From the NCBI GenBank assembly GCA_004764695.1, contig SMSO01000025.1:5558862-5622861 (forward strand): DNA of 64,000 bases. The letters are read 5' to 3'. This document shows, piece after piece, positions 20,020 through 36,700 of the stretch. A model generated the notes under the pieces. The model was not told where the DNA came from, ran no database searches, and worked only from the letters and a program-made list of their open reading frames with translations. This DNA is from Schizochytrium sp. TIO01 (lineage: Eukaryota; Protista; Bigyra: Labyrinthulomycetes). The position numbers and the translations under genes were made by a program. Positions within the stretch are counted from its first letter, which is position 1; each line of letters begins with the position of its first letter.

Positions 20020-22881
20020 GTCGGGTGACTATACAATTCGAGCCAACAACGACCCGAGTCTACTGAGTAGATAGATATAAGGATCCTCTCCTTGGAAAAG
20101 GAGAAGGAAGTAGAGAAATAGAGAATGAAATCCCCCCCCAAAAAAGTAAGAACGCTCTCGAAGACTTTGCCAAATTGTTGAAGTCTAGGAGGATATTCAC
20201 GTGTGCTTGCGGGATTTTTGTCTTATTGTCTTGGTTTTGTTGTTGTTTGTGCTTTGTTGGTATCTGCTTGCTCCGATAATTCTGATAAATGTGATCTATC
20301 TGATTGGCAAACCTGTTTCCTTTCGCCTTCGAAGACAGTTGCTTTATTGATAGCTCCTTTTTAAAAGCTATCCGCCGCTTAGGAAGAAAGCAAAGATATA
20401 ACTAGCTCTTGAGCTAGCAGAGAAAAGAATCCGAATAATATCGATTCAAAAAAATCGACTAGAAGTGGTGGCCCGCTCCACACAGGGCGACCACTCAGAT
20501 GCTTCTCAATGAACTGGCTGGGGTAGAGATATAATGGATAGAATTTACCAGGTGGCTTCTTATTGCAGACGATAAAGTCCACTGAATAGAAACTGTGCAA
20601 TGAACTAGAGCTCGCAGAACTTGATCCCTGCGAGGTTGACCTTGTTCGTTGCTTTAAAACACTTCTTAACCTCGGGGCAATGAGGAGCTTGACGAGGCTG
20701 AAGAATAAACCTGACAAGATTCAGCAGACGGTGTAGTAGTGGGAAACCACAAGCTTTCCAGAAGCAAGTTAGCTATCGTCTGACTGATGGTAGCGTGCTC
20801 AACCCTGCACACCCAACTCTTTCCTGAACAATCTGTTCACCTTCCACGCGTCTCTCCTCGCGTGATTTATTTCTGAAGTACAACCTGCTTTCCCACGTGT
20901 AGCACGCAGCCACCAAAGGAGCTACCCTGCTTAACCTCAAGTCAAGAATCTCGCGCGCTCCAAGATATAGGACGGTTGGGCTGTCTCCAAGCCAACTAGC
21001 TTCGTTAGCTAACTCGCTCTCACTACCTACGCTGTCCTCGATCACTCTCGCGCTCTCGCCAGCTAGAACACGGCACGGCTTACGTAGAAAGAATACCCTC
21101 AACGGCACCACGTCCGCCGGCCCACGCGGTGCCAGGCCCGCGGAGGCCTCCGAGGCTTGTCCTTCGCGTCTCGTTCCACGCAACACAAAGAAAAGGACTC
21201 GCAATCAAACTAGTACTAAAAGGCAGAAGAAGCAGAAGAAGTTGGCGAAGTACAAACAACAAGGGCGAGAAAGACACAGCACAGTCTCCGCTCAATAACA
21301 GGAAAGATAAAGAGAGAATCGCCAAAGAAGAATCGAAAGAAAGTATGAAAGAAAGAGAGAAAGAAAGAAACAGAGAAAAGAACGGAAGCAAGAACAAGAA
21401 CAGGTCTCACTCGAAGAAAACCAAAAAGAGGAAGAACAGCAGCCGCAATCGATCACTCTTGGCTCACTCTTAAGCCGTGGAACCGCGCCAGAACTGCCTG
21501 ACTGGTCTCTTAGGGCTGAGTCTGCGAGAGCACAGCAATGCAGTCCTGCTCTCGTGGCTTGTCAGTCAGGTGTTCTTCTTCGTCTGTTCTTCTTCGCTAT
21601 CTCTTGATAACTTTGTTTGTTCTTCTTGTTGTTCCTTCTCCCCGGATCTGCGACGATGTGCACCGCCTCGGAGGTCCGGTGTGGCGCGACAACGATTCGC
21701 GGGGTGGATCCTACTGCACGAGGTGGCGTGCGAGAGGGTGGGGCGAATGTATCGCGGTTTTGCCTTTGACTGCGGCGGAAGAAGTGGCGTCAGGGATGAT
21801 GCCGCGGGCGGGTTTTTGAAAATCCGGGCGACGATGAACCGAATGAGGGCCCAAGTGACCGAGGCAAGAGCACGCAGCTCACCGTGCCAACGCTGCCGAC
21901 GACGCAGGCAGCGACAAAGGGCCGCCGCACTGCGCCTGCGCTCCAATCGCCTCCGTCGCGCAGCCTCCTCCGCGACGACGACGACGACGACGACTCGGCT
22001 CTGCTGCTTATTGACTAATTACTTTCATACTTGCTCTGTCTCTGCCCAGTCCTTCGTGCTATACTCTACTTGCACCGCATTTGTTCTACTTCGAGTGGAT
22101 CCATAACCCACTTGTTCCCTCTATACCCTACTGTACGCTTGCGCTGCTTGGATTCCCTACTTGTGTGCCAGAATACTTCACTGTAGAGCATTGGATACAC
22201 TAGGTTATAGCAACCCACAATTACCGCCATGGAACCGGATAGCTCATTTACAGCAGACCCTCCCTCGCGCTCACATCGCGCGCTCTCTGTCTCCCTCACT
22301 CTTCGCCCTTTCTTCCCGCAGCCGGAGGGGGCTCTCGAGTGAAGAGAGACGGGCTGGAGGAAGTTGAACAGACTGTCACTGGAGCTGAAGGGAGAAAATA
22401 CTCCCACATCTCCGACCTCGCCTACACAATACCTTTAACCTCTGAGGAAGACCGAACACGGGTGGGGCGAATATCTTCCTCTGAAGGACCCATGTTGTCC
22501 CTGGCAACACTGCTGTACGGCAAAGAAAATTCGCTGTGGGAAATCTTGTCCCTCACCAAGTCAATACAATAACATAAAGATCTCAAATTACACACTGAGC
22601 TTAATCTAGGGAAGATTTTCCTTCATTAAGGAAGGTGCCACTGTAAATTACGCGTGTCTGTACCTTTGATAATTTCCCAGTGCGTCCAGACTGAGATGTG
22701 GAGCAAATCCCGCAGCCCCTCTCTTGCGCGAAGAAGAAGTGGGACGCAAAGCCTTAGCGTCGGTAGCGAGGTCACTAGTAGGCGCCCAGTAGGTAGGGCT
22801 ACCAGCACAGGTTATCTACAGAAGAGTAGACATAGCTACTTCAATCACAAAGAACAGCGGATCCTCTCTAAACAGACAGAC

Positions 22882-22912
<31 letters not shown>

Positions 22913-24465
22913 CAAACCTCATCAGTCTTCTCCCTCGCTAGATAAGAGCAGACTGGCTGCCTAGCTGAGGAGAACTAGTCCAGGCTGTTCTCCATAAGCG
23001 CGGCATGGTCCTCAGAACCCCCTGCCTGTATCTTCCTTCCGTGGCGGCCTCCGTCTGTGAGTGGGCGCGATGGGACCACAATGCCTCGAAACGGCACCTC
23101 ACCAGAACAACAACCTTCGAGCTGACTGGCCTTCTGCTTCTTCCTTTCCCGCCATTTCCTATCTAGTTAGTTATGCCTATTATTTCCATCTATAGAAAGA
23201 AAGGAAGAACTTGAATGAAAAGAATGAAACAATGAAACAATGAAACAATGAAAGAATGAAAGAATGAAAGATTGAAGGTAGGTAATAGGATTAGTAGTAG
23301 TAGGAGTAGTAGTAGCAGGTAGGTAGCTAGTATGCTATTGCAACAGAGAGAGACTTAGCCGGTACTACTGCTGCCTATCTAAGGCACGGCAGTAGGCAGT
23401 CAGTCTCTCTATATTCTCCTCCTTGTCACGTTCAGACCTTGATGAATTTTGGCTTTAATTATACGCTCAATAGCTATGCACAACGAGGTTTCCATTGGTC
23501 CAAACTGCTGGCATTTCTTTGGGCAATCGTCGATGCAATCGGCAATCGGCATTGAGAAAGCTTTTTCTTGGGCACCGTCGATGATCTCAGAGTGAGTGAT
23601 CTTAGCGATGATGATGACTGGACTTGACATCGCTTCACGAGGAAGTTACGCTGCCGGTGTCCGTTCAAGGCCGGTTTATGGACATGCACTTGTCTGAAAG
23701 TAGCCTTGGAAGCAAGCGTGTTGCGACGAGGCTGCAGAACACTGGCTGCACTGGCGTGCGTGGCAGCTTGCAAATGGTGCGTTTGTCCATCAAGAAGATG
23801 CCACCTTTGACAACTACCCGCTTCGAGGTTGTGCCTCGTACTAGCCCTCCCGAAACCAATAGGCACCAAGCTTTAAAAGGCACTTGGAACACATCACATC
23901 ACAATAGCGGGAACAAGGAAAAGCGCTAAAGTAGTAGTCCCACCTAGCAGGATCTCTATCAGTGTCCGTTCGAGAAGTTTGGCCAATCTTCCTCTGAGCG
24001 TAAGCAAACGATTGCTTCGATGCTGTTTTATTTCAAGGCCCATGCTCAGGATATCGGTTTAGATTCTCTGAATGGATAACCAATTCGCAGCTGCGCCCCG
24101 AGCGTGGCAAGAGTGGGAAGCATATGTGGCTTGGGTAATGAACTGATTCATGAGCTTGTGGTTTTCTAGGTGGTCATGACCTAAGGTACTTTAGTTAGTT
24201 AGTGAGTTTGCTGAGGTGGCGGTGATTTATCATCTTGCAAAATAAGAACGACTAGAGTTGGAACTTACAAGGCTGGCGGTTTAGAGAGATGGATGCACAG
24301 TCTACGGGGTGGTCAAGAGTAGTAGTTGATGATTTCCAAGATGGAGACAACTTTATAATGCCAATAGATGGACACACCAAACTGCCGGGAAACAATGATT
24401 GTCTGCACCTTCAAGCAATGTGTCTTGAATAAGATAAAGGCGGGTGTATTTGCTGGTGCTCGTGA

Positions 24466-24500
<35 letters not shown>

Positions 24501-27500
24501 TTGGTAGTGGTGGTAGTGAGTGAATAGTGACACAGGCGATTTTCATGTTAGTAAATGCGCAAAGAAGAAAATCTTAAGAGACTTTACCATGTATCCAAAA
24601 CCTTTCCAAAAATAGGAACACAAGTGCGCCTAGGCTGAGCCCTAGGTTGGTACTTAACCAGGAAGAGCAGAAATAAAGCAGCTCTTGAAGAAAAGAAGTG
24701 CCAACGGAGGGCCGAACCTAAAGCATAAACTTTCTTGCCAGCTCGAATGGAACGCTCCGCGGGCCACCGCTGTAATTACTCTTTGCAAAGTGCTGTGTCG
24801 TATTCTTTTGGGAGAGAATCAAATCCTTGAAAGCCGTCTTGACTAAACTCAGTATGACAACCAAGCTAGGCAAGATGTGACAGCCCCCCCCCTAGCAGTA
24901 ACTAAGTCCTGGCATTAATAACTGCTCCTACAGTAATGACTATAAGGAAGTAAGGGATGTTAGCAGCACTATTTCGGATGGTAACGCTAACTCGCCTTAC
25001 TTCCATTGGAATACTTCTATTAGAAGGGAAGCGATGTTGAGGTTGAAATTAAGAGTGAGAACGAAACAGTATCCGGTACTTTGTAATGAACGTTATGTTC
25101 TGCCCTCCACCTGAGTCTACACCACCCTTCCCGCCTGCAACTGTGTTATATTAATTTCCAGTACATAAGAAGAAGAGTCAAGATCGAGATGGGCAACGTT
25201 CGCGAACCTGCAACAAGTAAAGATGTGTGATGATTGAGGATCATGCACCATTTTATGCAGAATAGCTCTTCTCCTTTTACAAAGATGAGAAGGGAAAATA
25301 GAGAAAGACAACAGACTTGTTCGTTTCGTATCGAAATCTCTCTGTAAATAGTTTACATATATTTCTGCAAATGCGCGCTTTCTTTCCCTCTTCATCGTGC
25401 CTTGTTTGGTGTCAGATCAAATAAAAAGTAAACATCCCTTTAAGGCATGTCTTCATCGAAAATAGGACCTCTTTGATGTACTCGAGAATGCATTTACAGA
25501 TAGCAATCCTCAATAAATCTGCATATTGTGTGTGCTCTAATTAACTATATTATGATTTGTTCCCAGTTTCAAATCAATCGAACAAATTTTGGTTATTGGT
25601 ACCGTGTGTCACTTACTCGCTGCAACTTGTTAGTCTCTCAAGCCTCGAAATTTGAGACAGCCCCTTTGCCTGCAGAAAGAGCTAGAGAGCGGCACCATTA
25701 TCGTTTAATTCTATATTTTTTATGGGTGCTATGTGTCGGCCTTTTATTCTGTAACCTCCAACCTCTAGTTGAATAGATCGTTTTAAGGGTGCGATTGCAA
25801 GCGTACATGTTTAGAAAAATGTATCCGGGTACCACTGCCCACCCTATAAATTTGCCCCAATCTTCATACTGTTGTTCTGAAAACATTCCAGCTCATACTT
25901 TATTTGGTCCCAAGGAACTCTTGCGAAGAAGACACAGAGGAAAATACAAAGTCTATATTTAAAGCAAAACAGTAAGAAGGAAGGAGCTGCATAGTAGAAT
26001 GTGGATATACAATCGTCACATAGCAAAGTAAATCAATGGCGTTAATCAATTTTAATACATGCAATAGTCCAATCTACTGCTATGTGCTGTTCTTCCAGAG
26101 ATTGCGCGTGTTTTAACGTTATAAGTACATGTGATACTAGATGAAGTATAGAAACTCCAAATTCATTCATGTTGTTCTACTACAACCATAATGATATAAA
26201 AAAAGAAAAGAAAAGATTTAATGTTCCCTATGTTCCCCGCTCTCAAAAAAAATCTGAGTAGAAAAAAAAAAAAAAAAACACTCTTAAGGAACTGGTTGAA
26301 GCAACTATTGAGTAGGTGCCCTTATGCCTTCTCAATCTTGCAACCGTGTGCTTTCCAATGCGCCAAACCAACCCAACCCTCTGCTGATATTTTATATCTA
26401 AAGCTCGTGTGTAAAACTTTCGACAATTTGTTTGTAATCAATGGTACCAGAGCCTCCTGGTGAAGGGCAATCCTCTTCTCTGGATTGAATGGTATAAGAA
26501 AATCATTTGTCTCTGCCCTTTAAAATCAGCCCTTTCTCTGACCCTAAATTGAACCCTTTTTTCATGACTACGCAATCGCAACGAGTTTATTGCTACCCAG
26601 TCGGTTAACCTTGCAAAATCTCACGATCTCTTTTAAGTAGAGAAATTGTTAATTTAAAAGCATAGACTCTAAAACCCAAAGAATTCTTGCTTACCGCCGT
26701 CTAGGTCGATCTTTGAGCACTAGAGCTATTCCCGGCTTACTTGTGCAAAACCCGCATTAATGTGTAAGATGGGACTGTTAATTTAGTGCGTACTGTACGG
26801 TCTAGTAAATCTCAAGCATTACATACACCTGGGTTGGATTGCAGAATCTAATTCTGGCTTGCAAGCACGCGATGCGTGGTATGGTATTATCGAAATACAG
26901 ATACCTTAAACGTTGATGATTCTTTTGGCCCGTGTTGATTTATGAATTTTGTTCCATATATCTAGAATATATGGGTAGAAATCATTTGTCGATCAGTAGC
27001 CATGGTACTTGGCGCACAACTTCTGCCTGCCTTTGTCACTTAAAGTCTATAATGAAGTTTATTTTTATGGCCGACCTATGGGCCTTTCCGAAATAAGCAA
27101 CAAGAAAAACGATCGCCAAGCCCTGCAGCCAGCGCTTAACCTTCCTAGTCATGCGTCAAGATATATCCATGAAACCTAAGTTAGAGCATACTTGGTAAGC
27201 TTGGTAAAGGTTATCTTTCACGGGAAACTTTTGAAGTCATATCGTTTGTTTTGAAACGGGCCGGAATCCCCCTTTTCCCATTCAACCCGCGAGAACTTGC
27301 GTGCCGAGATTTAATGTTGCAGAAGTATTTTCACGAACCGCTAATTCGAAGTTTACAATTTTGAAAAGCTGCAGCTAGATCATGATTTCTTTGATCTCAA
27401 ACCTTAATTTTCATTATATCTACTACACCTGGTTGTTGGAGAAGTTTAAATTGTTGTATTCTATCACCTTGACACCAGGTACGTAAGTTTGCATCTTTAA

Positions 27501-28419
27501 ATTTTACAAGCAAAGCACTGCCATCCGAGTTGTCGTCTGCCGCAGGCCTCTTGCATGGTGTCTCTTCGTAGTATGCTCGTATGCTTAAGTTCGGGTGTCG
27601 CGAAGCGTCCATGAGACTGCGCAACGTTCGGTAAAGTGCGGAGAAGACTCTTCGTGGCTCATTTACATCTAGTCTTGCACGCTTACTGCCCTGTGTTGTT
27701 GTTGTTTAGCACCACGAGGTTCATAACCCGAGTGTGCTCATCGAGCCTCTGCTTTCGGCACCTACTACTACGCTCTCTCCGCGTCTGGCTCAGAGTTGTG
27801 GCTTCCTATCTTTCCACTAGAGTGCGGAATCACTCGGATTCATCGCGAGAGACACGGTCTTCAGAGCGCAATTTGTTGTTTGCCTGTCTTTTTCATGTTC
27901 CACATCGATTAATTAATTTTCTAATTAACATTTTATTTATTTATTTTAATTTAAAAAGTCATAGGACCTACAGTACAACATATTTATATACAGGACCAAA
28001 CTAAGCTTTCATTCTATTCCTTCAAGTTCATTGATCCACTTCTCAAAATACGACTTACTTGCTCCTACAAGTTTTGTTGGTTGGTTGGCTTATTTTACTT
28101 CACTTTGATAAGGCTTTGTTCACTCCGTGAGTGGGCGTGTGGTACGGGCATTGGCGCCTAAAGCCTGAGTGCTTAATACACAACAAACATGAACAGTCTT
28201 TCTGCCGGATCAGAAGAGGATTTCGAGTTGGAAGTCTGAAGTTCGTTCAAGAACTTGTCCACCTGGCACAACTATTATTTTTCAGAGAATAGAGCAAATT
28301 GAGTAAAATATGAACGCTAGACTCTAATACCGAATCTATCAGTGGGCAGCTTCCTCACGCAATCGAGGCACCTGCACAGTGCTCTCGAAATGAGCAAACA
28401 TCCAACTAACCAACCAACC

Positions 28420-28490
28420 AATCAATCAATCAATACATCAATCAACACATCAATCAATACATCAATCAATACATCAATCAATACATCAAT
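28420..28490. repeat. 12-bp degenerate repeat (ATCAATCAATAC)
   Basis: Read directly from the sequence; about 6 copies. Confidence 0.85.
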
Positions 28491-29814
28491 CGACACACAA
28501 CATACAAAAATACATAAGAATACATAAAAGGAAAAGTACAAACAAACAAACAAACAAACGAACGAACACATTGAATCAAACGCCCGTGCCCACTTTGAAG
28601 CCTGAAGTTGCTCAGATTTCTTTTGTCGCTAACCAGAACTGGCTGCTGCTGCTACTACTGCTGCTAGTCCTCTCAGCAGCTTCATCAACCAACAAAAGAA
28701 AGAGTCAACTCTACTTGCGCCTCCAATTCACCATCATTCGCCATTCGTCTTTACAGTGCTTCTTTTTACTTCTGAAAAATAAATAAAAATAATATTATTA
28801 TGTCCATTTGTAAGTTCTAATTGTATAATCAAAATTAAAATTAAAAGTTTAGCAGCTTTATACCTTTTTAATAACCAAAATTAAAATTTAAAAACTTCAC
28901 CTCTTCATCTAAAACATAACACGATATGCACTGAGTCGCACATGCCACAGCCTCTCCCATCCTACCCCCCTTGGGAGAATTGAACTGCGTGCGGGGAATG
29001 AAAGAAAGGGGCGAAAGAGGAAGCAGACAGACAGACCTTCGACCCTTCTTTCGCTGTCGTCTGCGCTGCGTCGAGGCCCCATTGCGCCTCGCCGCTCTCG
29101 CCTTAGGAGCCCAGCGCGCAGAGACTGAACGTCGTCGCCGGCATGCCTCGGCCTCTTGAAGAGCAAGCACTCCTTCAAGAATAGGCTCTTCGAGGAAAGA
29201 AGAACTATTTGGCACACCATGAAAGACCTCAGTGGAAGGAGCTTAGTCGGTCGCTAGGCAGTGCTAGTGAGTGAGGGTCAACCTGTCTATGAGGTTTGCC
29301 TGGGCAAGGGGGCAGCCAGGGAGTCCTCGCGTAAGTGAAGAGTATCTAAGAAGTCGCCGCTCAGGCATATATGAAAGAGAGGGAATAGAGAGTAGAGAAT
29401 AAAAGAGAGACAAAAGAGAGGAAAGGCGCCTCTTTTAAAGAAGGCGAAGGCGGCAGTGATAATAGATGGAACACCCTCCACGGATAATGACGACGCCGGA
29501 GAGAAGAAGAGTAAAGAAGGCGCATGCTTCTTACTTAGTTGGCCGCTCGTTAGTTGGTTGGTTGGTTGGTTGGTTTGTTAGTTAGTGAGTGAGTGAGTGA
29601 GTGAGTTGATATTTAGTTGCGGAGGAGATCTTCAATACCCGCAAAGATCGCTCTGACTTTCGAGTGCTTGTTTTGGGGATTGTTGTATTTTCGTTTAACT
29701 TTTTGCGAGTTTTTGGAAATATTGGGGGAAGCGAAGCTTGAAAAGACGGTAGAATGAAAGGAAGGGAAGAGAGAAACGGAGAAATGCGAGTTAGCTCTAA
29801 AGATAGAAGATGCA

Positions 29815-29884
29815 TTGCTTTCTTGCTTTCTTGCTTTCTTGCTTTCTTGCTTTCTTGCTTTCTTGCCTTTTTGCTTTCTTGCTT
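29815..29884. repeat. 9-bp repeat (TTGCTTTCT), about 7 copies
   Basis: Read directly from the sequence. Confidence 0.9.
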
Positions 29885-31933
29885 CTGCAGAGTAGAGTAT
29901 AAAAGGATATAAGATATTATATTAATATGATAAACAGCAAACAAAAATACACAAATTAAGTAGAAACGCTGCCAAACCAAACCTCAGAAAAGGCCAAAGA
30001 CAGTTTGCTCGGAATCGCGGAAGAAGTCATTTCCACCCTTTCCACAGCAATTGCAATCGTCATTGAATCAATCGATGCACATCTGTTTTCATGGTTTCTC
30101 CGTTTCAGCCAGGAGCGCAAGTTTTTGCACATGGCATTGTGGCCACGAGGGCGCCCTCCTTGGTGCATGGATTACTCGCTCCGCCACGAACTGTGAACCA
30201 TCTCAAGGAGTGACAACAGCTACCGGGATCCAAACAGCTGTCTCGTTGGTGTTGATAGCGAGCCGCCTTTTTGAGGCCAACGCAGTAGCTAGGTATACAT
30301 GCATGCAATCACCTCTTTGATCTTGAGGCAGCCGAAGACCTCAGAGCAGAAGAACTCCGCTTCTCCCTCCGCGAACTAGCACCGGGGCAGTACTGGCTGG
30401 CCTCCTAGTACAGGGCTTGACTCGACTGGCCGACCCACCGAAGAACATCTAATGCACGCCATGGCCTCTGCCGGAGCGCTGGCATCGTGGAGGAGAAGAG
30501 GTAGATAAATATGTTTGTTTATTTGCATAGGTATATGCATGGATGTATACGGTGGAAGGCGGAGGAGAGGGAGCTCTCGAGGCAGTGAACTGAGTTTGCT
30601 TGGTCTTCCTACGCTGCGGATGGTGAAGTGGCACCCCGAAAGCTGAGTTTTGGCAACCTGGGCAAAACTCACTGATCATGAAGATTGCATTTTCACCTCC
30701 TGCTGATCAGAGAATCTTTTCCTCCTTTCCTTTCGCCTCTTCTTCTTTTCATGACATTTATTTGACTGATTCATTTAGTTATTTAGCTATTTAGTTATTT
30801 TTAATTAAATTAATTATTTGTTTGTTATTGTAACTTGCTGCTTAGAATATTAAAAATAAACTAAATAAAACAATAATAGTTTAAAAATAAAATTTTAAAA
30901 TAGCCTTGGCAAAACATGGGAACTTCATAATGGGTCATGATTTTGATTATGATGGTCCTACTAAGTGGATGAAAAGGTGGAAATTAGAGACAGAAAGAAA
31001 GCAGAAAGAGAGCAGGTGGGTGGAAAAGGAAGAAAATGAAAAAGAAAGAGAGAGAGAAAGAAAGAGAGAAAGAAAGAAAGAAAGAAAGAAAGAAAATGAA
31101 AAAGAAAGAAAGAGAGAAAGAAAGAAGTCGCTTCTTCTGCTCGAGGCAACTCCAATTCCGATTGGCGTCACGCACGCAGGCGCGGCGGCGCGAGGTCCGA
31201 GGTGGAGCGGTGCTAGAGTTCCTTTGGGCATAGCGCGGCGCCTGCCATCCCGCGGTCAGAAGGAGGAGGCAAGTGTGGACAGCGTGGTGGGTCGTCCTGT
31301 TGGCTCCTGGGCTTCCTTACGCGTAGAATTGATTCTGTCTCAACTTGAGAATCAGCATTTTTGAGGCCATTCATAGATTGGCACAGACAACTTTCTCAAG
31401 CCGTCTGAAGCATCGCGCGAACTCCGATCGCAAGCGACCTTAAGACAGACGGCCTACACGAGCTGGTGGAAAAGGGAGCGGCCTGCTAGCAGCGACGGGA
31501 AAAGCTGCTGCAACGGAGACAAGCGAAGCCTTGTAGCCTTGAGCAAAGAGACTCGGAGCCTGGTGTTGAAAGCACGTCTTACTAGAGTGAAGTAGTGGAC
31601 TTTCCTCTCCGTTAGCTCCAGGGTCTTCCGTTGCTCCTCTACATAGGGTTGGCATCGCAATTGCCTTGACGCTCGGCACAAGCGCGGGGGGTGATCTGGC
31701 CTTGTGGCGAGCACCTTTTAGGGATTGCTTCGCCTTGAGGCACGCTGTACTTTTTTGCTCTGCTCTACTGTACTTTAAGTTTTTGGCTGCAATTTTTGGG
31801 GCCGTGGACCTTGCTCTTCGCACAACGAACCAAGAGTTTCGATAGACAAACTGTCAACGTGGACGTTGGCAGTGGTGGCAAAGTAAATACTTTCACATAT
31901 TCTTAGACGGCCAGAGATAGTCAGTGAAGAGTT

Positions 31934-33793
31934 ATGTTTTCTCAAAGTGGAATGTCAGGAGCGGACGACACTGCAATTTTGCAAGGCGTGAGCCGTGCAG
32001 AGTCTGTCTGGGACCAAGATGCTGTGGCTGATGCGCTCATCTTTGTGGCATATTTTCTGATTCCAGTACAATTAATGGTAGTCTTTAAGTCAGTCAAGAT
32101 ACCCATGGTGGTCCAACGCATCCGTTTGGCATTCTTCTCGTTCATTTTGAGCTGTGGTGTCACTCACCTCTTGGCCACAATGCCGCACTCTTGGACCTGG
32201 CTTCCCAGCATCATGGCTCTCAGCAAGTGGTCTTGCGCTCTTGTCTCCCTCTCCACGGCCGTATTTTTGCACATCCATTTCATTGACGTGCGTGAACTCC
32301 TGCGTCAAGGTTCAGAACTTGAAAAGGAGATTGCACAAAGCCGAGCTGCTCTGATCGACATGCACAAGAGGCACTCCAAGCTCGGCCGTCAACATGAGGA
32401 GGCGCTTCGTCTCGCCAGAGCCAAATCTGATTTCGTCGCCACCATGTCTCATGAAACGCGCACCCCTTTGTGGAGCATTATAGGGTTTGCCGATATTCTT
32501 GACGGCACGAAACTCACAGACTGGCAGAGGGAGCATGTCTCGGGAATCCAAAAGAGTGCTTCGCATTTGCTTTGCCTCATCAACGACGTACTTGACTGCA
32601 CGCGCCTTGAGCATGTCGAGTACACTCTTGAAAAGGCGCCCTTTTCTTTGCCCGCCTGTCTTAACACTGTCAAGTCCATGATGGAAATCCCTGCTAAGGA
32701 AAACGGGGTGCGCCTTTGCATGGATGTTGATAATCCGGGAATCAACCAGGTGGTTCTTTCTGACGAACGTCGTCTCACGCAGGTGCTGACAAACATCACT
32801 TCGAACGCCATAAAGTTCACCCCGCGAAACGGCAAGGTCACATTCAGAGCAAGTGTAGTCTCTGCATCGTATGTACAAGCTCTCCGTAAGGACCCAAGTA
32901 TTCATGCGGCACATCCACACCTCGCAGAGCCCCTACCCTCATCACGCTTTTTTGTTTTTTCTGTGCAAGACTCCGGCGTTGGCATTGAATCAAGTAAGAT
33001 CCCAATCATTTTTGATCGCTTCATGCAAGCAGATAACTCTATTGAACGTAAGTATGGCGGTACAGGCCTCGGACTCTCCATTTGCAAAGTTCTGGTTGAC
33101 AAAATGCTAGGTGGCATTTTTGTGCGCAGTTCCCCACAAGCAGGATCAACCTTTATTGTCTGCATTCCAAGTGATGCTCTTTCTCCAAGTCCGCCCTCCA
33201 CACAAGTTGCTCGCCCTCAAGTCGTTCTAGATAAACGTATAGCAGACGCGCAAGAGAAGGTCAGCCGTCGCAGACAGCTTATCGGGTCGCCAAGACAAAG
33301 CTCTATCTCTGCGCCAGTTTCAACAGCAACAACGCCATCGTCGACCTCTTCAGGTTTATCTAGCTCCAGTTCTACTATTGGCGCGGTCTCCCCACCGAGC
33401 CAGCAACATAGTTCTGTAGAAGAGAACTTGCCCATTCTGGTTGCAGAAGATAATGAAACTAATCAGCTCATCATGAAGCGGATGATGCAGCAGCTCGGGT
33501 ACAAGAATGTTACTTTCGTTGCAAACGGCAAGGAAGCTGTCGAACACGTTATGACGCATCAAGATCTCAAGTGTATCTTTTTGGACATCCACATGCCGGT
33601 CATGGATGGCATCCGCGCTTGCCAGGCCATTCGTTCTATTCCTGGATGCGGTGAGCAATTTTGGATCATGGCTCTCACCGCAGATTCAAGTCAGGAATTT
33701 CTCTCTCTCGGTTTTGATGATCATATCTTGAAACCTTGTAGGAAAGAGCAGCTGCACCAGTCAATTATTCGTCGGCCTGATGCTTACGTCTAA
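31934..33793 (+). CDS. Hybrid sensor histidine kinase with ETR1-type ethylene-binding transmembrane domain (EBD-HisKA-HATPase-REC, no GAF)
   Basis: The N-terminus ADALIFVAYFLIP...FFSFILSCGVTHL...SKWSCALVSLSTA matches the ethylene receptor TM1-3 pattern. Kinase boxes: H-box SHETRTPL, N-box QVLTNITSNAIKFT, G1 VQDSGVGI, F-box FDRFMQAD, G2 GGTGLGL. Receiver: AEDN...LDIHMPVMDG...ALTA...KP. Confidence 0.93.
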   Translation: MFSQSGMSGADDTAILQGVSRAESVWDQDAVADALIFVAYFLIPVQLMVVFKSVKIPMVVQRIRLAFFSFILSCGVTHLLATMPHSWTWLPSIMALSKWSCALVSLSTAVFLHIHFIDVRELLRQGSELEKEIAQSRAALIDMHKRHSKLGRQHEEALRLARAKSDFVATMSHETRTPLWSIIGFADILDGTKLTDWQREHVSGIQKSASHLLCLINDVLDCTRLEHVEYTLEKAPFSLPACLNTVKSMMEIPAKENGVRLCMDVDNPGINQVVLSDERRLTQVLTNITSNAIKFTPRNGKVTFRASVVSASYVQALRKDPSIHAAHPHLAEPLPSSRFFVFSVQDSGVGIESSKIPIIFDRFMQADNSIERKYGGTGLGLSICKVLVDKMLGGIFVRSSPQAGSTFIVCIPSDALSPSPPSTQVARPQVVLDKRIADAQEKVSRRRQLIGSPRQSSISAPVSTATTPSSTSSGLSSSSSTIGAVSPPSQQHSSVEENLPILVAEDNETNQLIMKRMMQQLGYKNVTFVANGKEAVEHVMTHQDLKCIFLDIHMPVMDGIRACQAIRSIPGCGEQFWIMALTADSSQEFLSLGFDDHILKPCRKEQLHQSIIRRPDAYV

Positions 33794-36700
33794 TGAATTG
33801 CATCGTTTTCTGAGCCATTGCTTTTTCCGCATTCTTATTCTCGCTTAAAGGATGAGTACTCGAGGCTGGAACATTAATGCTGGCTGACTCGTTCTCTCCA
33901 TAGTATATTCTTTGACACCGCCCATGCATATGCGTTGAGATTTCGTTCAACATGGTAGTATATGCAGTCGCTATATTCTCAATCTTCAGTATGATAAATT
34001 AACTTTCAAGCCTTTTTCCCCTTTTCCTTGTGTTTGTCTTGCAGTCCTTTAGCTGGTAGCTCTTATCCTTGGGTAGCAGCGATCACCGCCTTCCTTCACT
34101 TGCCCCAGCTATATCTAGAATATAGAACATACACAAAACTGTCAGGATGCCGAAGCACTTTCGTTTTTCGAAACAGAAAAAACTATAATATCTTTTGAAA
34201 GAACTTCTGTTTCTGTTCGTTTCTTTCTCTTTGTCTTTTCTAACAATTGATTGTTTCAGAGCAAGCGGGCGAAGAAAGAGAGGGGGGTACCGCAGATGAC
34301 AAGGGGAATAAGGCCATATGAGCGAGTAATTTCGATAGCGAAATGAACTCTATGACCATCTGCTTTGACCGACCCCGTATGCGTCAAATGTATACTTGCT
34401 TACTGTAACTAGCTTGGCTTCTCCCTTTTTTTCCTTCTTTTTCCTCTTTTTCTCTTTTCCCGTATTTATTTGCAGTCAAAAGCTTTTTTCTTTCTTCTTT
34501 TTACAATATAATTTTATCTCTATGAATTTAATTCCTTATTTTTATTTTTATTTTTTAAAGAGATAATTTAAAATATTTAAAAATAAATTGAATATTAATA
34601 AACATTACCTTTAATTAAAATATATATAGAATATAATATATATAGATATATATTATTACTTGTTGCTATTGTTGCTGTTGATGTTATCATACTTTTTATT
34701 TACATAAAATGAAGAGGACCAAAATCTACATCAAAACGCGTATGGAGGGTTTGACGTTTAGGCAGAACTCTTTTGTGTCATTCGGACAAACTCCATAACA
34801 GCGATGCACCCGCTTCAGTAAACCTTGAACGGCAGACGCTCTGGCAGCGCCATCATCGTTATCCTTTATTACTCTGTCGGCGCGTGCTTCCCGTACGCAA
34901 AGCACCGTAGTTTCACCTACTTTCTTGCGAGCACTCACTAACTAACTTGTGCAAACGAACCACAACGAGTCAGATCGCCTCCCCGCAAAGCGAGCTCTCT
35001 CGAGAAGGCCTCGAAGAAACCTGCGCGACCTCCGCCACGGCAGCACGCAGCACGCAGCTCTTCGTTTCACGAGTTCTAACTCAGGCGCACCAGCGCCACA
35101 TTGATCGAGGCAAACCCGTGGTCTCAGTCCAACCCATCGTTTCACAACAGACGCGACGCGGGTTCTATGGCGATTCACCTAGCTACAAAGTCGTCAAGCC
35201 CACGCCCAAGAAGCCTCTCGCCTCCAGCCGTCGCCCTCTGCCCACGAATCGCACGAATCGTGTCCTCGAGGCCAAGGGTCCGGAAAGCGTGCGCGACGAG
35301 CAGAAACTCATTGCGAGCAGATGGGTTTTGAGATTTTGCCATAACTCATTACCGTGGCAGAGGGAGGCTTCAGCAGGCGCTGCGTGGGTCCTTAGCGATT
35401 CCTCTATGTAGGCGGTAGGATCTCTCTTCGAAGTACCAATGTCGCAGCGCGTGCCGTCTCGAGGCCAACGGAATAGCGGCCAGCTAGCGTAAACTGTAAG
35501 GACCGGCGGCGGCCTCGCACAAGTTCCAGGATTGCAGAATCAGCGCGTACATACATACATACGCAGACTCTTCAGGAACGAGACCGGAGAGGAAAGCAAT
35601 GATGACCAAGGCCGCTCAGGCTGAAGCAAAGCGCTCCGGAGGACGCGGAGGGCAGCGACGGAGAGCTCACAACGCCTGGGTGCTTCATTTGCAGTATTTG
35701 CCCGTGTCCGTTTATTGCGTTTGCACTGCATTACACGAATAAAATTGCATTGCATTGCATTGCATAGCTGCCTGATCAATACGGAAAGCAATGCACGAGA
35801 CGACCCAATCACAGCTCACAAGACAACGACCGCTAGGTACTCACTCTGCCATCGTGGTGAACAACAAGACCGTGGACCTGCACGTGCACCTTCGAGTCTC
35901 TGCGATTGGGCACTTGAAGGCGTGAAGCCAGGCATGAGCAATGACTGATGGATGCTCGACTCCGATGGCAACGAATTGGATTGAGTGCTGCGGACTCTGA
36001 GATGAGCTGCATCTCAGAGGCGACCAAGTGCTCGTCTCCAGCGCAGGATTGCAGAGATCTGACTGAGGCTTAAAGTCAGGTCTTTGCCCAAGCTGCGAAA
36101 GTATTGAGCGAATCGAGAGTGACGCAGAGGCGCAGTTCTTCAGGAGTGCCAAAATGGACTCGTGAACGAAGCAATATCACCTACCTCCACTGCGTAAGGC
36201 CGGTCTTCAACGTTGGCTTGGCGCTTTGGCTTTGCACGGTGGTGGGCGAGAGGGTGGGTGAGACGCATCGGAAGCAGCGTCGAGGACGAGAGCGGGTGCT
36301 CGTGGTGAGTGGTGTCGTCGGCTGTGATCACTGGCAGAAGCAAAGTAGCAGGCATTCATCTCAGCTTTACACCACGCCATGCATGCCTAGCAATACCTAT
36401 CCGCCACTAGTACTACTCAAAAGAACATGCAGTGCTTAGTTTATTGACTTCCTGTGTTTCTTTTCTTTGCTGTGTTTCTTCTCTTTGATGAAGAGTTTGT
36501 TTTTAATTTGAGGACGGAGGAAGAAGAAATAAAAATAAAAATAAAAATAAAAATAAGAATAAAAGGGTATACACTATTGGGCACCTACTAGCAGGTAGTT
36601 GGCAATGGTGAGTGGGTACCTAATCTGCATCCTTAGAAAACCAACGAAACAAAATCGTGAACTCGCCTCCTGCAAATTGTGCAAGAGGCGGAGGCGGAGG

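What the first reader, a model, noticed from the sequence alone, without database searches (positions are those of the whole stretch)
31934..33793. Ethylene-receptor-type hybrid histidine kinase without GAF in a non-plant eukaryote
Seen: D33, Y40, I43, P44, F67, F70, I71, C74, H78, K98 and S105 correspond to Arabidopsis ETR1 D25, Y32, I35, P36, F58, F61, I62, C65, H69, K91 and S98, including the Cu(I)-binding CxxxH. The sensor joins through a short coiled coil directly to an intact HisKA/HATPase/REC. The GAF domain and the N-terminal disulfide Cys are absent. Known: ethylene-binding-domain homologs occur in plants and cyanobacteria and have been noted in some fungi and protists, mostly without functional tests. 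Inference: a copper-dependent ethylene or small-gas sensing phosphorelay, plausibly for detecting plant or algal substrate.
Basis: partly seen in the sequence, partly recalled or inferred. Interest (0 to 1): 0.85.

Follow-up and report, generated by a model that had tools for sequence, protein, structure and literature searches.

The report
Ethylene-receptor-like kinase in a thraustochytrid
A marine thraustochytrid protist has an intact, transcribed sensor kinase whose membrane part keeps every residue plants use to bind ethylene through copper, but reviews already list such homologues for this protist group, so it is a well-documented new member, not a new kind.

Summary
Window 31934-33793 (+) is an intronless 619-aa ORF. 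Pfam finds ETR1_N (52.6 bits, cut-off 27), HisKA, HATPase_c and REC, and no GAF. AlphaFold2 predicts three membrane helices, with helix 3 running unbroken into the phospho-His helix.

The gene is native and in use:
- It lies on a multi-megabase contig.
- It has an 81%-identical orthologue in Hondaea fermentalgiana (Thraustochytrida).
- Transcript-like contigs from four studies cover it, one with a poly(A) tail.
- Six of six strain differences in the CDS are synonymous.

The genome also holds a paralogue, which this scan had already noted on other DNA (s1-831183). It also holds one HPt, about ten further receiver proteins and Cu-ATPases. No CTR1 or EIN3 hits were found.

The nearest relatives (Tetraselmis, MMETSP and metagenome proteins) share the GAF-less layout and form a strongly supported clade. 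Many bacteria have the same layout.

Novelty is modest. Reviews (PMC6944256, PMC7700396) already list ethylene-receptor homologues in Labyrinthulomycetes and other SAR groups, with no functional tests. Ethylene as the ligand remains an inference. Verdict: real, a new member of a known kind, moderate interest.

The parts
31166..31933 (+). 5' leader of the mRNA. Transcript-like contigs start at 31166, 31206 or 31307. It contains no ATG. An in-frame TGA lies at 31925.
31934..33793 (+). Intronless CDS of 619 aa plus stop: ETR1_N-HisKA-HATPase_c-REC hybrid histidine kinase
   Evidence: no joints
32018..32272 (+). ETR1_N ethylene-binding-type domain (aa 29-113). It carries D33, Y40, I43, P44 (helix 1), I71, C74, H78 (helix 2) and K98, S105 (helix 3).
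31997..32086 (+). Predicted membrane helix 1 (aa 22-51)
   Evidence: (pLDDT about 90), hydropathy
32105..32179 (+). Predicted membrane helix 2 (aa 58-82) with the C74-x3-H78 copper-ligand pair
32201..32278 (+). Predicted membrane helix 3 (aa 90 to about 115), the start of a single helix spanning aa 90-190
32279..32419 (+). Helical (coiled-coil-type) linker aa 116-162, which takes the place of the plant GAF domain. The S105-to-H173 spacing of 68 residues is identical in both thraustochytrid paralogue lineages. It differs from the spacing in the Tetraselmis group (61) and in P0029 (82) by whole heptads.
32420..32614 (+). HisKA/DHp domain (aa 163-227) with phospho-acceptor H173 in the S-H-E-x-R-T-P box
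32762..33172 (+). HATPase_c catalytic domain (aa 277-413). The N box (N291), G1 (D346-G350), F (F360/F363) and G2 (G376-G380) are present, with a roughly 25-aa insertion.
33182..33412 (+). Ser/Thr/Pro-rich linker predicted to be disordered (aa 417-493)
   Evidence: pLDDT <50
33434..33766 (+). Receiver domain (aa 501-611) with E505/D506, phospho-acceptor D551, T582 and K600
33794..34019 (+). 3' UTR. Contigs end at 34018/34019, and one carries a poly(A) loose end at 34019.

Best explanation
This is a native, expressed thraustochytrid gene for a membrane-bound hybrid histidine kinase. Its sensor is a true member of the ETR1_N ethylene-binding domain family. The proposed mechanism has five steps, and all of them are inferred. 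(1) The three-helix bundle, probably as a dimer held by the DHp four-helix bundle rather than by N-terminal disulfides, holds Cu(I) on C74/H78. The copper is loaded in the secretory pathway by one of the genome's P1B Cu-ATPases. (2) Ethylene, or a closely similar small unsaturated molecule, binds the Cu(I). D33 and K98 couple binding to helix 3. (3) Helix 3 continues as one uninterrupted helix through a 47-residue coiled-coil linker into the H173 helix. Ligand binding therefore changes the register or rotation of the DHp and hence autophosphorylation, without a GAF relay. (4) The phosphate moves from H173 to D551, then to the single HPt protein (G000:C24:326104), then to one of about ten receiver proteins. 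This is a classical His-Asp phosphorelay, not the plant CTR1/EIN2/EIN3 route. (5) A plausible biological role is sensing algal, plant-detritus or photochemically produced ethylene in sea water. What is shown here: domain membership, conserved residues, intact catalytic motifs, predicted topology, transcription, purifying selection, and the presence of the relay parts. What is not shown: copper loading, the ligand, the sign of regulation and the output.
For: ETR1_N scores above the Pfam cut-off and the HK and REC domains are intact. All seven residues reported as necessary for ethylene binding in AtETR1, plus K91/S98 and others, are conserved. Their roles are described in PMC11819568 and PMC6944256. 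Related domains bind ethylene in Azospirillum AzoEtr1, and the transmembrane helices of Agaricus AbETR1/2, which the authors liken to plant ethylene receptors, bind it too. The AF2 model has pLDDT 81.5, three TM helices and a continuous helix aa 90-190 into the DHp. Linker lengths differ by whole heptads across the GAF-less clade: 61, 68 and 82. Transcript-like contigs in 4 runs from 4 studies cover the gene, with a poly(A) end and no introns. Six of six strain variants in the CDS are synonymous. The TM domain is 89% identical to Hondaea against 81% for the whole protein. The genome has one HPt, 18 REC hits of which 8 are in hybrid HKs, and Cu P1B ATPases above the TIGR01511 cut-off. No CTR1-type EDR1 or EIN3 domain was found.
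Against: No binding or genetic data exist for any SAR homologue (PMC7700396). Conserved residues do not prove that ethylene is the physiological ligand. The structure prediction is a monomer without copper. The REC-HPt complex prediction gave no verdict. The CTR1/EIN3 negatives had no positive control. The runs used for expression are only guessed to be RNA, although the poly(A) end and the discrete contig ends argue for RNA.
Confidence: 0.6

Rival explanations
1. The sensor fold and copper site are as above, but the physiological ligand is not ethylene. It could be another Cu(I)-binding small molecule common in sea water or detritus (other alkenes such as propene or isoprene, CO, isocyanides). 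Alternatively the domain could report copper or redox status itself.
For: Only the residues are conserved. The GAF-less clade sits on a long stem (0.77 changes per column), so specificity could have drifted. No SAR homologue has been tested.
Against: Every ETR1_N-type domain tested so far that I could find binds ethylene: plant ETR1, SynEtr1, AzoEtr1. The Agaricus AbETR1/2 transmembrane helices bind it too, though their Pfam family was not checked here. All seven binding residues are unchanged.
Confidence: 0.2
2. The membrane domain is only a conserved anchor or dimerisation module with no ligand, and the kinase is regulated otherwise or is constitutive.
For: There is no direct evidence of ligand binding. 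The N-terminal tail is variable.
Against: The polar and ligand residues buried in the membrane (D33, C74, H78, K98) are retained across plants, fungi, algae and bacteria and in both paralogues, with Glu for Asp25 in the paralogue lineage. The TM domain is the best-conserved part relative to Hondaea. Strain variants are all synonymous.
Confidence: 0.1
3. The gene is a contaminant or a recent bacterial transfer, not a real protist gene.
For: GAF-less ETR1_N hybrid kinases are abundant in Limnobacter and other bacteria.
Against: The window lies at 5.56-5.62 Mb of contig C24 in a 37-contig, 64-Mb assembly. The orthologue sits on a 475-kb Hondaea contig. The mRNA is polyadenylated with long UTRs. 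The ETR1_N tree puts the gene in a 99/93-supported clade with plants, fungi, Capsaspora, Nannochloropsis and Tetraselmis, apart from the sampled bacteria. The duplication into two paralogues predates the split from Hondaea.
Confidence: 0.02

Closest known systems
Arabidopsis ETR1 (plant subfamily 1 ethylene receptor)
   Same: It shares the three-helix ETR1_N domain with the same D25/Y32/I35/P36/I62/C65/H69 set plus F58, F61, K91 and S98. It also has a histidine kinase and a C-terminal receiver.
   Different: The window protein has no GAF domain between sensor and kinase and no Cys4/Cys6 disulfide pair. Plant signalling runs through CTR1/EIN2/EIN3, and no CTR1 or EIN3 hits were found here. The N-terminal tail is 8 residues longer.
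Tetraselmis chuii 'Ethylene receptor' A0A7S1X1L1 (P0008) and relatives P0006-P0011, P0010/P0013, P0029
   Same: They have the same GAF-less ETR1_N-HisKA-HATPase_c-REC order. They form one clade with both thraustochytrid paralogues, with support 99/98.
   Different: They are 24-35% identical overall. The linker is one heptad shorter in the Tetraselmis group (61 against 68) and two heptads longer in P0029. Tetraselmis is photosynthetic.
Hondaea fermentalgiana 'Hybrid signal transduction histidine kinase A' (P0002)
   Same: It is the orthologue: 81% identical, 615 aa, with the same four Pfam domains.
   Different: It comes from another genus. Its N-terminal tail and its CA-REC linker diverge. It is named generically in NCBI.
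Azospirillum brasilense AzoEtr1 and Synechocystis SynEtr1 (bacterial ethylene receptors with binding shown)
   Same: They share the ETR1_N domain with the seven binding residues and give two-component output to a response regulator.
   Different: They are bacterial. SynEtr1 carries a light-sensing GAF. They sit outside the eukaryotic clade as far as it was sampled here.
ETR homologues of early-diverging fungi, Capsaspora, Acanthamoeba, diatoms and Labyrinthulomycetes listed in reviews (PMC5285503, PMC6324907, PMC6944256, PMC7700396)
   Same: They are the same kind of finding: non-plant eukaryotic hybrid HKs with a complete ethylene-binding domain and no functional tests in SAR.
   Different: Rozella (P0028) keeps a weak, sub-threshold GAF match and a sensor-to-kinase spacing of GAF length. 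The texts I could read do not describe the specific thraustochytrid genes or the GAF-less clade.

Membership tests
ETR1_N ethylene-binding domain (Pfam PF25487) | Profile match above the curated cut-off | tested here: met
   52.6 bits against a cut-off of 27, E 5.9e-14. The six-frame genome search gives 56.6 bits.
ETR1_N ethylene-binding domain (Pfam PF25487) | Three transmembrane helices at the N-terminus | tested here: met
   AF2 helices 22-51, 58-82 and 90 onward with pLDDT about 90. There are three hydrophobic segments.
ETR1_N ethylene-binding domain (Pfam PF25487) | Seven residues needed for ethylene binding in AtETR1 (D25, Y32, I35, P36, I62, C65, H69), including the Cu(I) ligands Cys65/His69 | tested here: met
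   They correspond to D33, Y40, I43, P44, I71, C74 and H78. All are invariant or at least 90% conserved in 32 sequences. The full list of seven is from my own knowledge of Wang et al. 2006, which was not readable here.
ETR1_N ethylene-binding domain (Pfam PF25487) | Saturable Cu-dependent ethylene binding | not testable with these tools
   This needs a 14C-ethylene binding assay on aa 1-130.
Plant-type ethylene receptor (ETR1/ERS1 subfamily 1) | GAF domain between sensor and kinase | tested here: not met
   No GAF hit at E<=1. Only 47 residues separate TM3 from HisKA, and they are modelled as one helix.
Plant-type ethylene receptor (ETR1/ERS1 subfamily 1) | N-terminal Cys pair forming the inter-subunit disulfides | tested here: not met
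   The only Cys in aa 1-140 are C74 and C101.
Plant-type ethylene receptor (ETR1/ERS1 subfamily 1) | Downstream CTR1 (EDR1 domain) and EIN3 in the genome | tested here: inconclusive
   No PF14381 or PF04873 hit in G000, but the searches had no positive control.
Hybrid histidine kinase (HisKA family) feeding a His-Asp phosphorelay | H box His, and N, G1, F and G2 boxes | tested here: met
   H173, N291, D346/G348/G350, F360/F363 and G376/G378/G380 are conserved. HisKA scores 57.5 bits and HATPase_c 81.6 bits.
Hybrid histidine kinase (HisKA family) feeding a His-Asp phosphorelay | Receiver with the acidic pair, phospho-Asp, Thr and Lys | tested here: met
   E505/D506, D551, T582 and K600 are present. 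Response_reg scores 73.8 bits.
Hybrid histidine kinase (HisKA family) feeding a His-Asp phosphorelay | HPt protein and separate response regulators in the genome | tested here: met
   One HPt ORF of 186 aa (L004:1426-1986, minus strand) scores 37 bits and carries an H-x-x-K-G motif. Ten REC hits lie outside HisKA genes.
Hybrid histidine kinase (HisKA family) feeding a His-Asp phosphorelay | Physical REC-HPt interaction | tested here: inconclusive
   The complex prediction scored 0.01, which is no verdict.

The most novel reading that the evidence does not exclude
Thraustochytrids and chlorodendrophyte algae share a distinct GAF-less clade of eukaryotic ethylene receptors. In this clade the copper and ethylene site is wired through a rigid coiled coil, quantised in heptads, straight to an active kinase and a bona fide His-Asp phosphorelay. 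On this reading, a heterotrophic marine decomposer uses dissolved ethylene (or a similar alkene) as a cue, for example for zoospore settlement or chemotaxis, to find algal or plant material. That would be the first eukaryotic ethylene pathway shown to work by phosphorelay and not by CTR1/EIN2.
Probability: 0.3. Interest if true: 0.6.

Novelty: new member of a known kind. Interest (0 to 1): 0.35.

Why it matters
If the protein does bind ethylene, it would extend ethylene sensing to heterotrophic marine stramenopiles that decompose algal and mangrove detritus. It would also offer a simple, intronless, GAF-less receptor in a culturable, transformable group. In such a system the still-debated coupling between the copper and ethylene site and kinase output could be studied without the plant-specific CTR1/EIN2 layer. 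As it stands, it mainly confirms and documents in detail what reviews already state in one line: ETR homologues exist in Labyrinthulomycetes. The new details are a paralogue pair, the relay parts, evidence of expression, and the observation that the nearest relatives form a GAF-less clade.

Tried and rejected
- **The look-up of encoding contigs was closed.** No DNA of the Hondaea orthologue or of the metagenome relatives could be fetched. That ruled out dN/dS between species and any check of the taxonomic origin of P0010, P0013 and P0029.
- **Word-index search with aa 1-140.** It found only the protein itself and the Hondaea orthologue. The exhaustive HMMER profile search was needed to reach the family (2624 representatives at E<=1e-3).
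- **Search from the Limnobacter-like P0012.** It returned only bacteria and no Arabidopsis ETR1. ETR1 numbering was therefore taken from P0019, a plant-type fragment whose Cys4/Cys6, D25 and so on match the ETR1 numbering I know. The Arabidopsis sequence itself was never in hand.
- **Wang et al. 2006 (PMC1785413) is not held.**
- **No solved structure matches the membrane domain,** so no fold comparison was attempted.
- **REC-HPt complex prediction.** No verdict, so it is no evidence either way.
- **CTR1-EDR1 and EIN3 searches.** Both were negative but uncontrolled.
- **Contamination and bacterial-transfer readings.** Both were considered and rejected.
- **Literature searches for thraustochytrid or Tetraselmis ethylene-receptor studies.** They found nothing specific.
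Full report
**What is there.** Window 31934..33793 (+) is a single open reading frame of 619 aa. Pfam finds four domains in order:
- ETR1_N (PF25487), aa 29-113, 52.6 bits against a cut-off of 27
- HisKA, aa 163-227
- HATPase_c, aa 277-413
- Response_reg, aa 501-611

No GAF match appears even at E<=1. The first start codon follows an in-frame TGA 9 nt upstream. The 768 nt before it, which are covered by transcript contigs, contain no ATG at all. The only cysteines in the first 140 residues are C74 and C101. The protein therefore starts at M1 and lacks the N-terminal disulfide cysteines of plant ETR1.

**Residue check.** No tool returned Arabidopsis ETR1 itself. I used P0019 instead. It is a 147-aa protein that JGI names 'ethylene receptor', it came from the exhaustive HMMER search, and it has Cys4/Cys6 and the ETR1 register.
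- These columns are identical in a plant subfamily-2 protein, Rozella, Catenaria, Tetraselmis and a Limnobacter-type protein. The in-genome paralogue P0003, Hondaea P0004 and P0005 have Glu for Asp25.
- In a 32-sequence alignment of eukaryotic and bacterial members, I36, Y40, I43, P44, F67, F70, I71, C74, G75, H78 and S105 are invariant. D33 and K98 are at least 90% conserved.
- Published work states that seven conserved residues are required for ethylene binding, that C65 coordinates the copper, and that D25 positions H69 and pairs with K91 (PMC11819568; PMC6944256).

**Kinase and receiver are intact.** The following are conserved between the window protein, its Hondaea orthologue and its paralogue, and mostly across the wider alignment:
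- H173 in the S-H-E-x-R-T-P box
- N291
- the D346-x-G-x-G350 box
- F360/F363
- the G376-x-G-x-G380 box
- receiver residues E505/D506, D551, T582 and K600

**Predicted architecture.** AlphaFold2 with that alignment gives mean pLDDT 81.5.
- There are three helices in the membrane part (22-51, 58-82, 90 onward), at pLDDT about 90.
- Helix 3 continues without a break to residue 190. It runs through the 47-residue linker into the helix that carries H173.
- Next come the second DHp helix (196-226), the ATP-binding domain, a disordered Ser/Thr/Pro-rich stretch (417-493) and a normal receiver fold.

The spacing from S105 to H173 is 68 residues in both thraustochytrid paralogue lineages. It is 61 in the Tetraselmis group and 82 in P0029. 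These differ by whole heptads, as expected for a coiled coil whose register matters. P0010 and P0013 (58) do not fit the series.

**Whose gene it is, and whether it is used.**
- The window is G000:C24:5558862-5622861 of a 64-Mb, 37-contig assembly.
- The best relative is an 81%-identical, 615-aa protein of Hondaea fermentalgiana on a 475-kb contig. Hondaea is a thraustochytrid (Stramenopiles, Labyrinthulomycetes).
- An earlier follow-up in this scan also took the genome for a thraustochytrid.
- Twenty-four public runs from ten studies hold at least 85% of the locus words.
- In four assemblies of transcriptome size from four studies, single contigs cover 31166/31206/31307 to 34018/34019/34370. 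The contigs on either side are separate, there are no joints, and one has a poly(A) loose end at 34019. The 'RNA' label of these runs is only a guess by the tool, but the pattern is that of a polyadenylated, intronless mRNA.
- All six strain differences inside the CDS are synonymous third-position changes. The leader carries eight substitutions and an indel.
- The membrane domain is 89% identical to Hondaea, against 81% for the whole protein.

Contamination is excluded.

**Rest of the pathway in the genome.**
- ETR1_N occurs twice. The second copy (G000:C31, L003:5024-7183, 719 aa, 31% identical) has the same four domains and no GAF. The scan had already noted it separately (s1-831183).
- There are at least eight HisKA kinases.
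- There is one HPt ORF of 186 aa.
- There are 18 receiver hits, eight of them inside the hybrid kinases.
- Cu-transporting P1B ATPases score above the TIGR01511 cut-off.
- CTR1-type EDR1 and EIN3 domains were not found, but those searches had no positive control.

**Relatives.** The profile search of 1.84 billion representatives found 2624 proteins at E<=1e-3. Of the top 150, 142 carry the D/E-x6-Y-x2-[IVL]-P ... C-x3-H pattern.
- The nearest relatives, after the Hondaea and paralogue lineages, are proteins of Tetraselmis chuii (UniRef name 'Ethylene receptor') and T. striata, an MMETSP transcript, and marine metagenome proteins.
- All of those examined have the same GAF-less order. HisKA itself fell below threshold in P0007 and P0009, and P0011 (663 aa) shows no receiver, although its cluster holds 791-aa forms.
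- A plant-like protein (P0067) has a GAF domain. Rozella (P0028) has a weak, sub-threshold GAF match and a GAF-length gap before HisKA.
- A careful IQ-TREE of the domain (43 rows, 107 columns) gives a 99/98-supported 13-member GAF-less clade on a long stem. The clade holds both thraustochytrid lineages, each with its own Hondaea orthologue, so the duplication is older than that split.
- This clade lies inside a 99/93-supported group whose named members are all eukaryotes: plants, Rozella, Catenaria, Neoconidiobolus, Capsaspora, Nannochloropsis and Tetraselmis. The twelve outgroup rows, whose named members are Limnobacter and a planctomycete, fall apart from that group. Most rows are unnamed, so 'eukaryotic clade' rests on the named ones.
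- Direct ETR1_N-to-HisKA fusions are also common in bacteria. Examples are hundreds of Limnobacter-type proteins and 33 of the 57 representatives in which both motifs could be located.

**How it most likely works.** See Best explanation. In short, a Cu(I) site on C74/H78 in the membrane binds ethylene or a similar small unsaturated molecule. The change is passed by helix 3 and the continuous coiled coil to the DHp. The phosphate then goes from H173 to D551, to the single HPt, and on to a response regulator.
- Shown here: family membership, residue conservation, intact motifs, predicted topology, transcription, constraint, and the presence of the relay parts.
- Inferred: copper loading, ligand identity, the sign of regulation and the output.

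Precedents for ethylene binding by related domains outside plants exist: SynEtr1 and AzoEtr1 and Agaricus AbETR1/2.

**Comparison with what is known, and novelty.**
- Kabbara et al. (PMC6324907) reported ETR homologues in a diatom, Acanthamoeba and Capsaspora.
- Hérivaux et al. (PMC5285503) reported them in early-diverging fungi.
- The review PMC6944256 explicitly lists 'filamentous marine protists (Labyrinthulomycetes)' among lineages with ETR homologues.
- PMC7700396 repeats this for SAR and notes that no functional study exists.
- Pfam already tags the Hondaea orthologue as ETR1_N.

The finding is therefore a real and cleanly documented new member of a known kind, not a new kind. Three things are possibly new, and I found none of them in the searchable literature:
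- the well-supported GAF-less clade shared with Tetraselmis
- the heptad-quantised linker
- the paired paralogues

**Limits.**
- The REC-HPt complex job gave no verdict.
- Arabidopsis ETR1 itself was never retrieved by a tool.

Noticed in passing
G000:C31:7410023-7412182 (L003:5024-7183, +): A second ETR1_N-HisKA-HATPase_c-REC gene lies elsewhere in the genome: 719 aa, 31% identical, with Glu in place of Asp25 and a roughly 70-aa insertion in the ATP-binding domain. It has its own Hondaea orthologue (P0004). The scan already noted it as s1-831183.
   Followed up: partly
window 31166-31933: The roughly 630-770-nt 5' leader of the mRNA has no ATG at all in 768 nt. That is unusually clean for such a long leader and suggests selection against upstream starts.
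   Followed up: partly
window 30947-31231: A purine-rich low-complexity repeat lies just upstream of the transcript start. It reads as Lys/Glu/Arg runs on the plus strand and Ser/Phe/Leu runs on the minus strand. The reads tool skipped 31021-31130 as a repeat. It may be a promoter-proximal element or only a simple repeat.
   Followed up: no
G000:C24:326104-326328 (L004:1426-1986, -): This is the only HPt gene detected in the 64-Mb genome (186 aa, with an acidic N-terminal half). All eight or more hybrid kinases would have to share it.
   Followed up: partly
window 22107-31933: No ORF of 180 aa or more lies on either strand for almost 10 kb upstream of the gene, in an otherwise ORF-rich, intron-poor window. 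The content was not examined.
   Followed up: no
window 34747-35500: A separate low-depth transcript contig downstream of the gene shows many strain differences and small indels (17 substitutions and 11 gap letters in about 750 nt in run X1). It is much more variable than the kinase CDS.
   Followed up: no
P0006-P0011, P0010/P0013, P0029: In the GAF-less clade, the spacing from the Ser98-equivalent to the phospho-His is 61, 68 or 82 residues, which are heptad steps. P0010 and P0013 are the exception at 58.
   Followed up: partly
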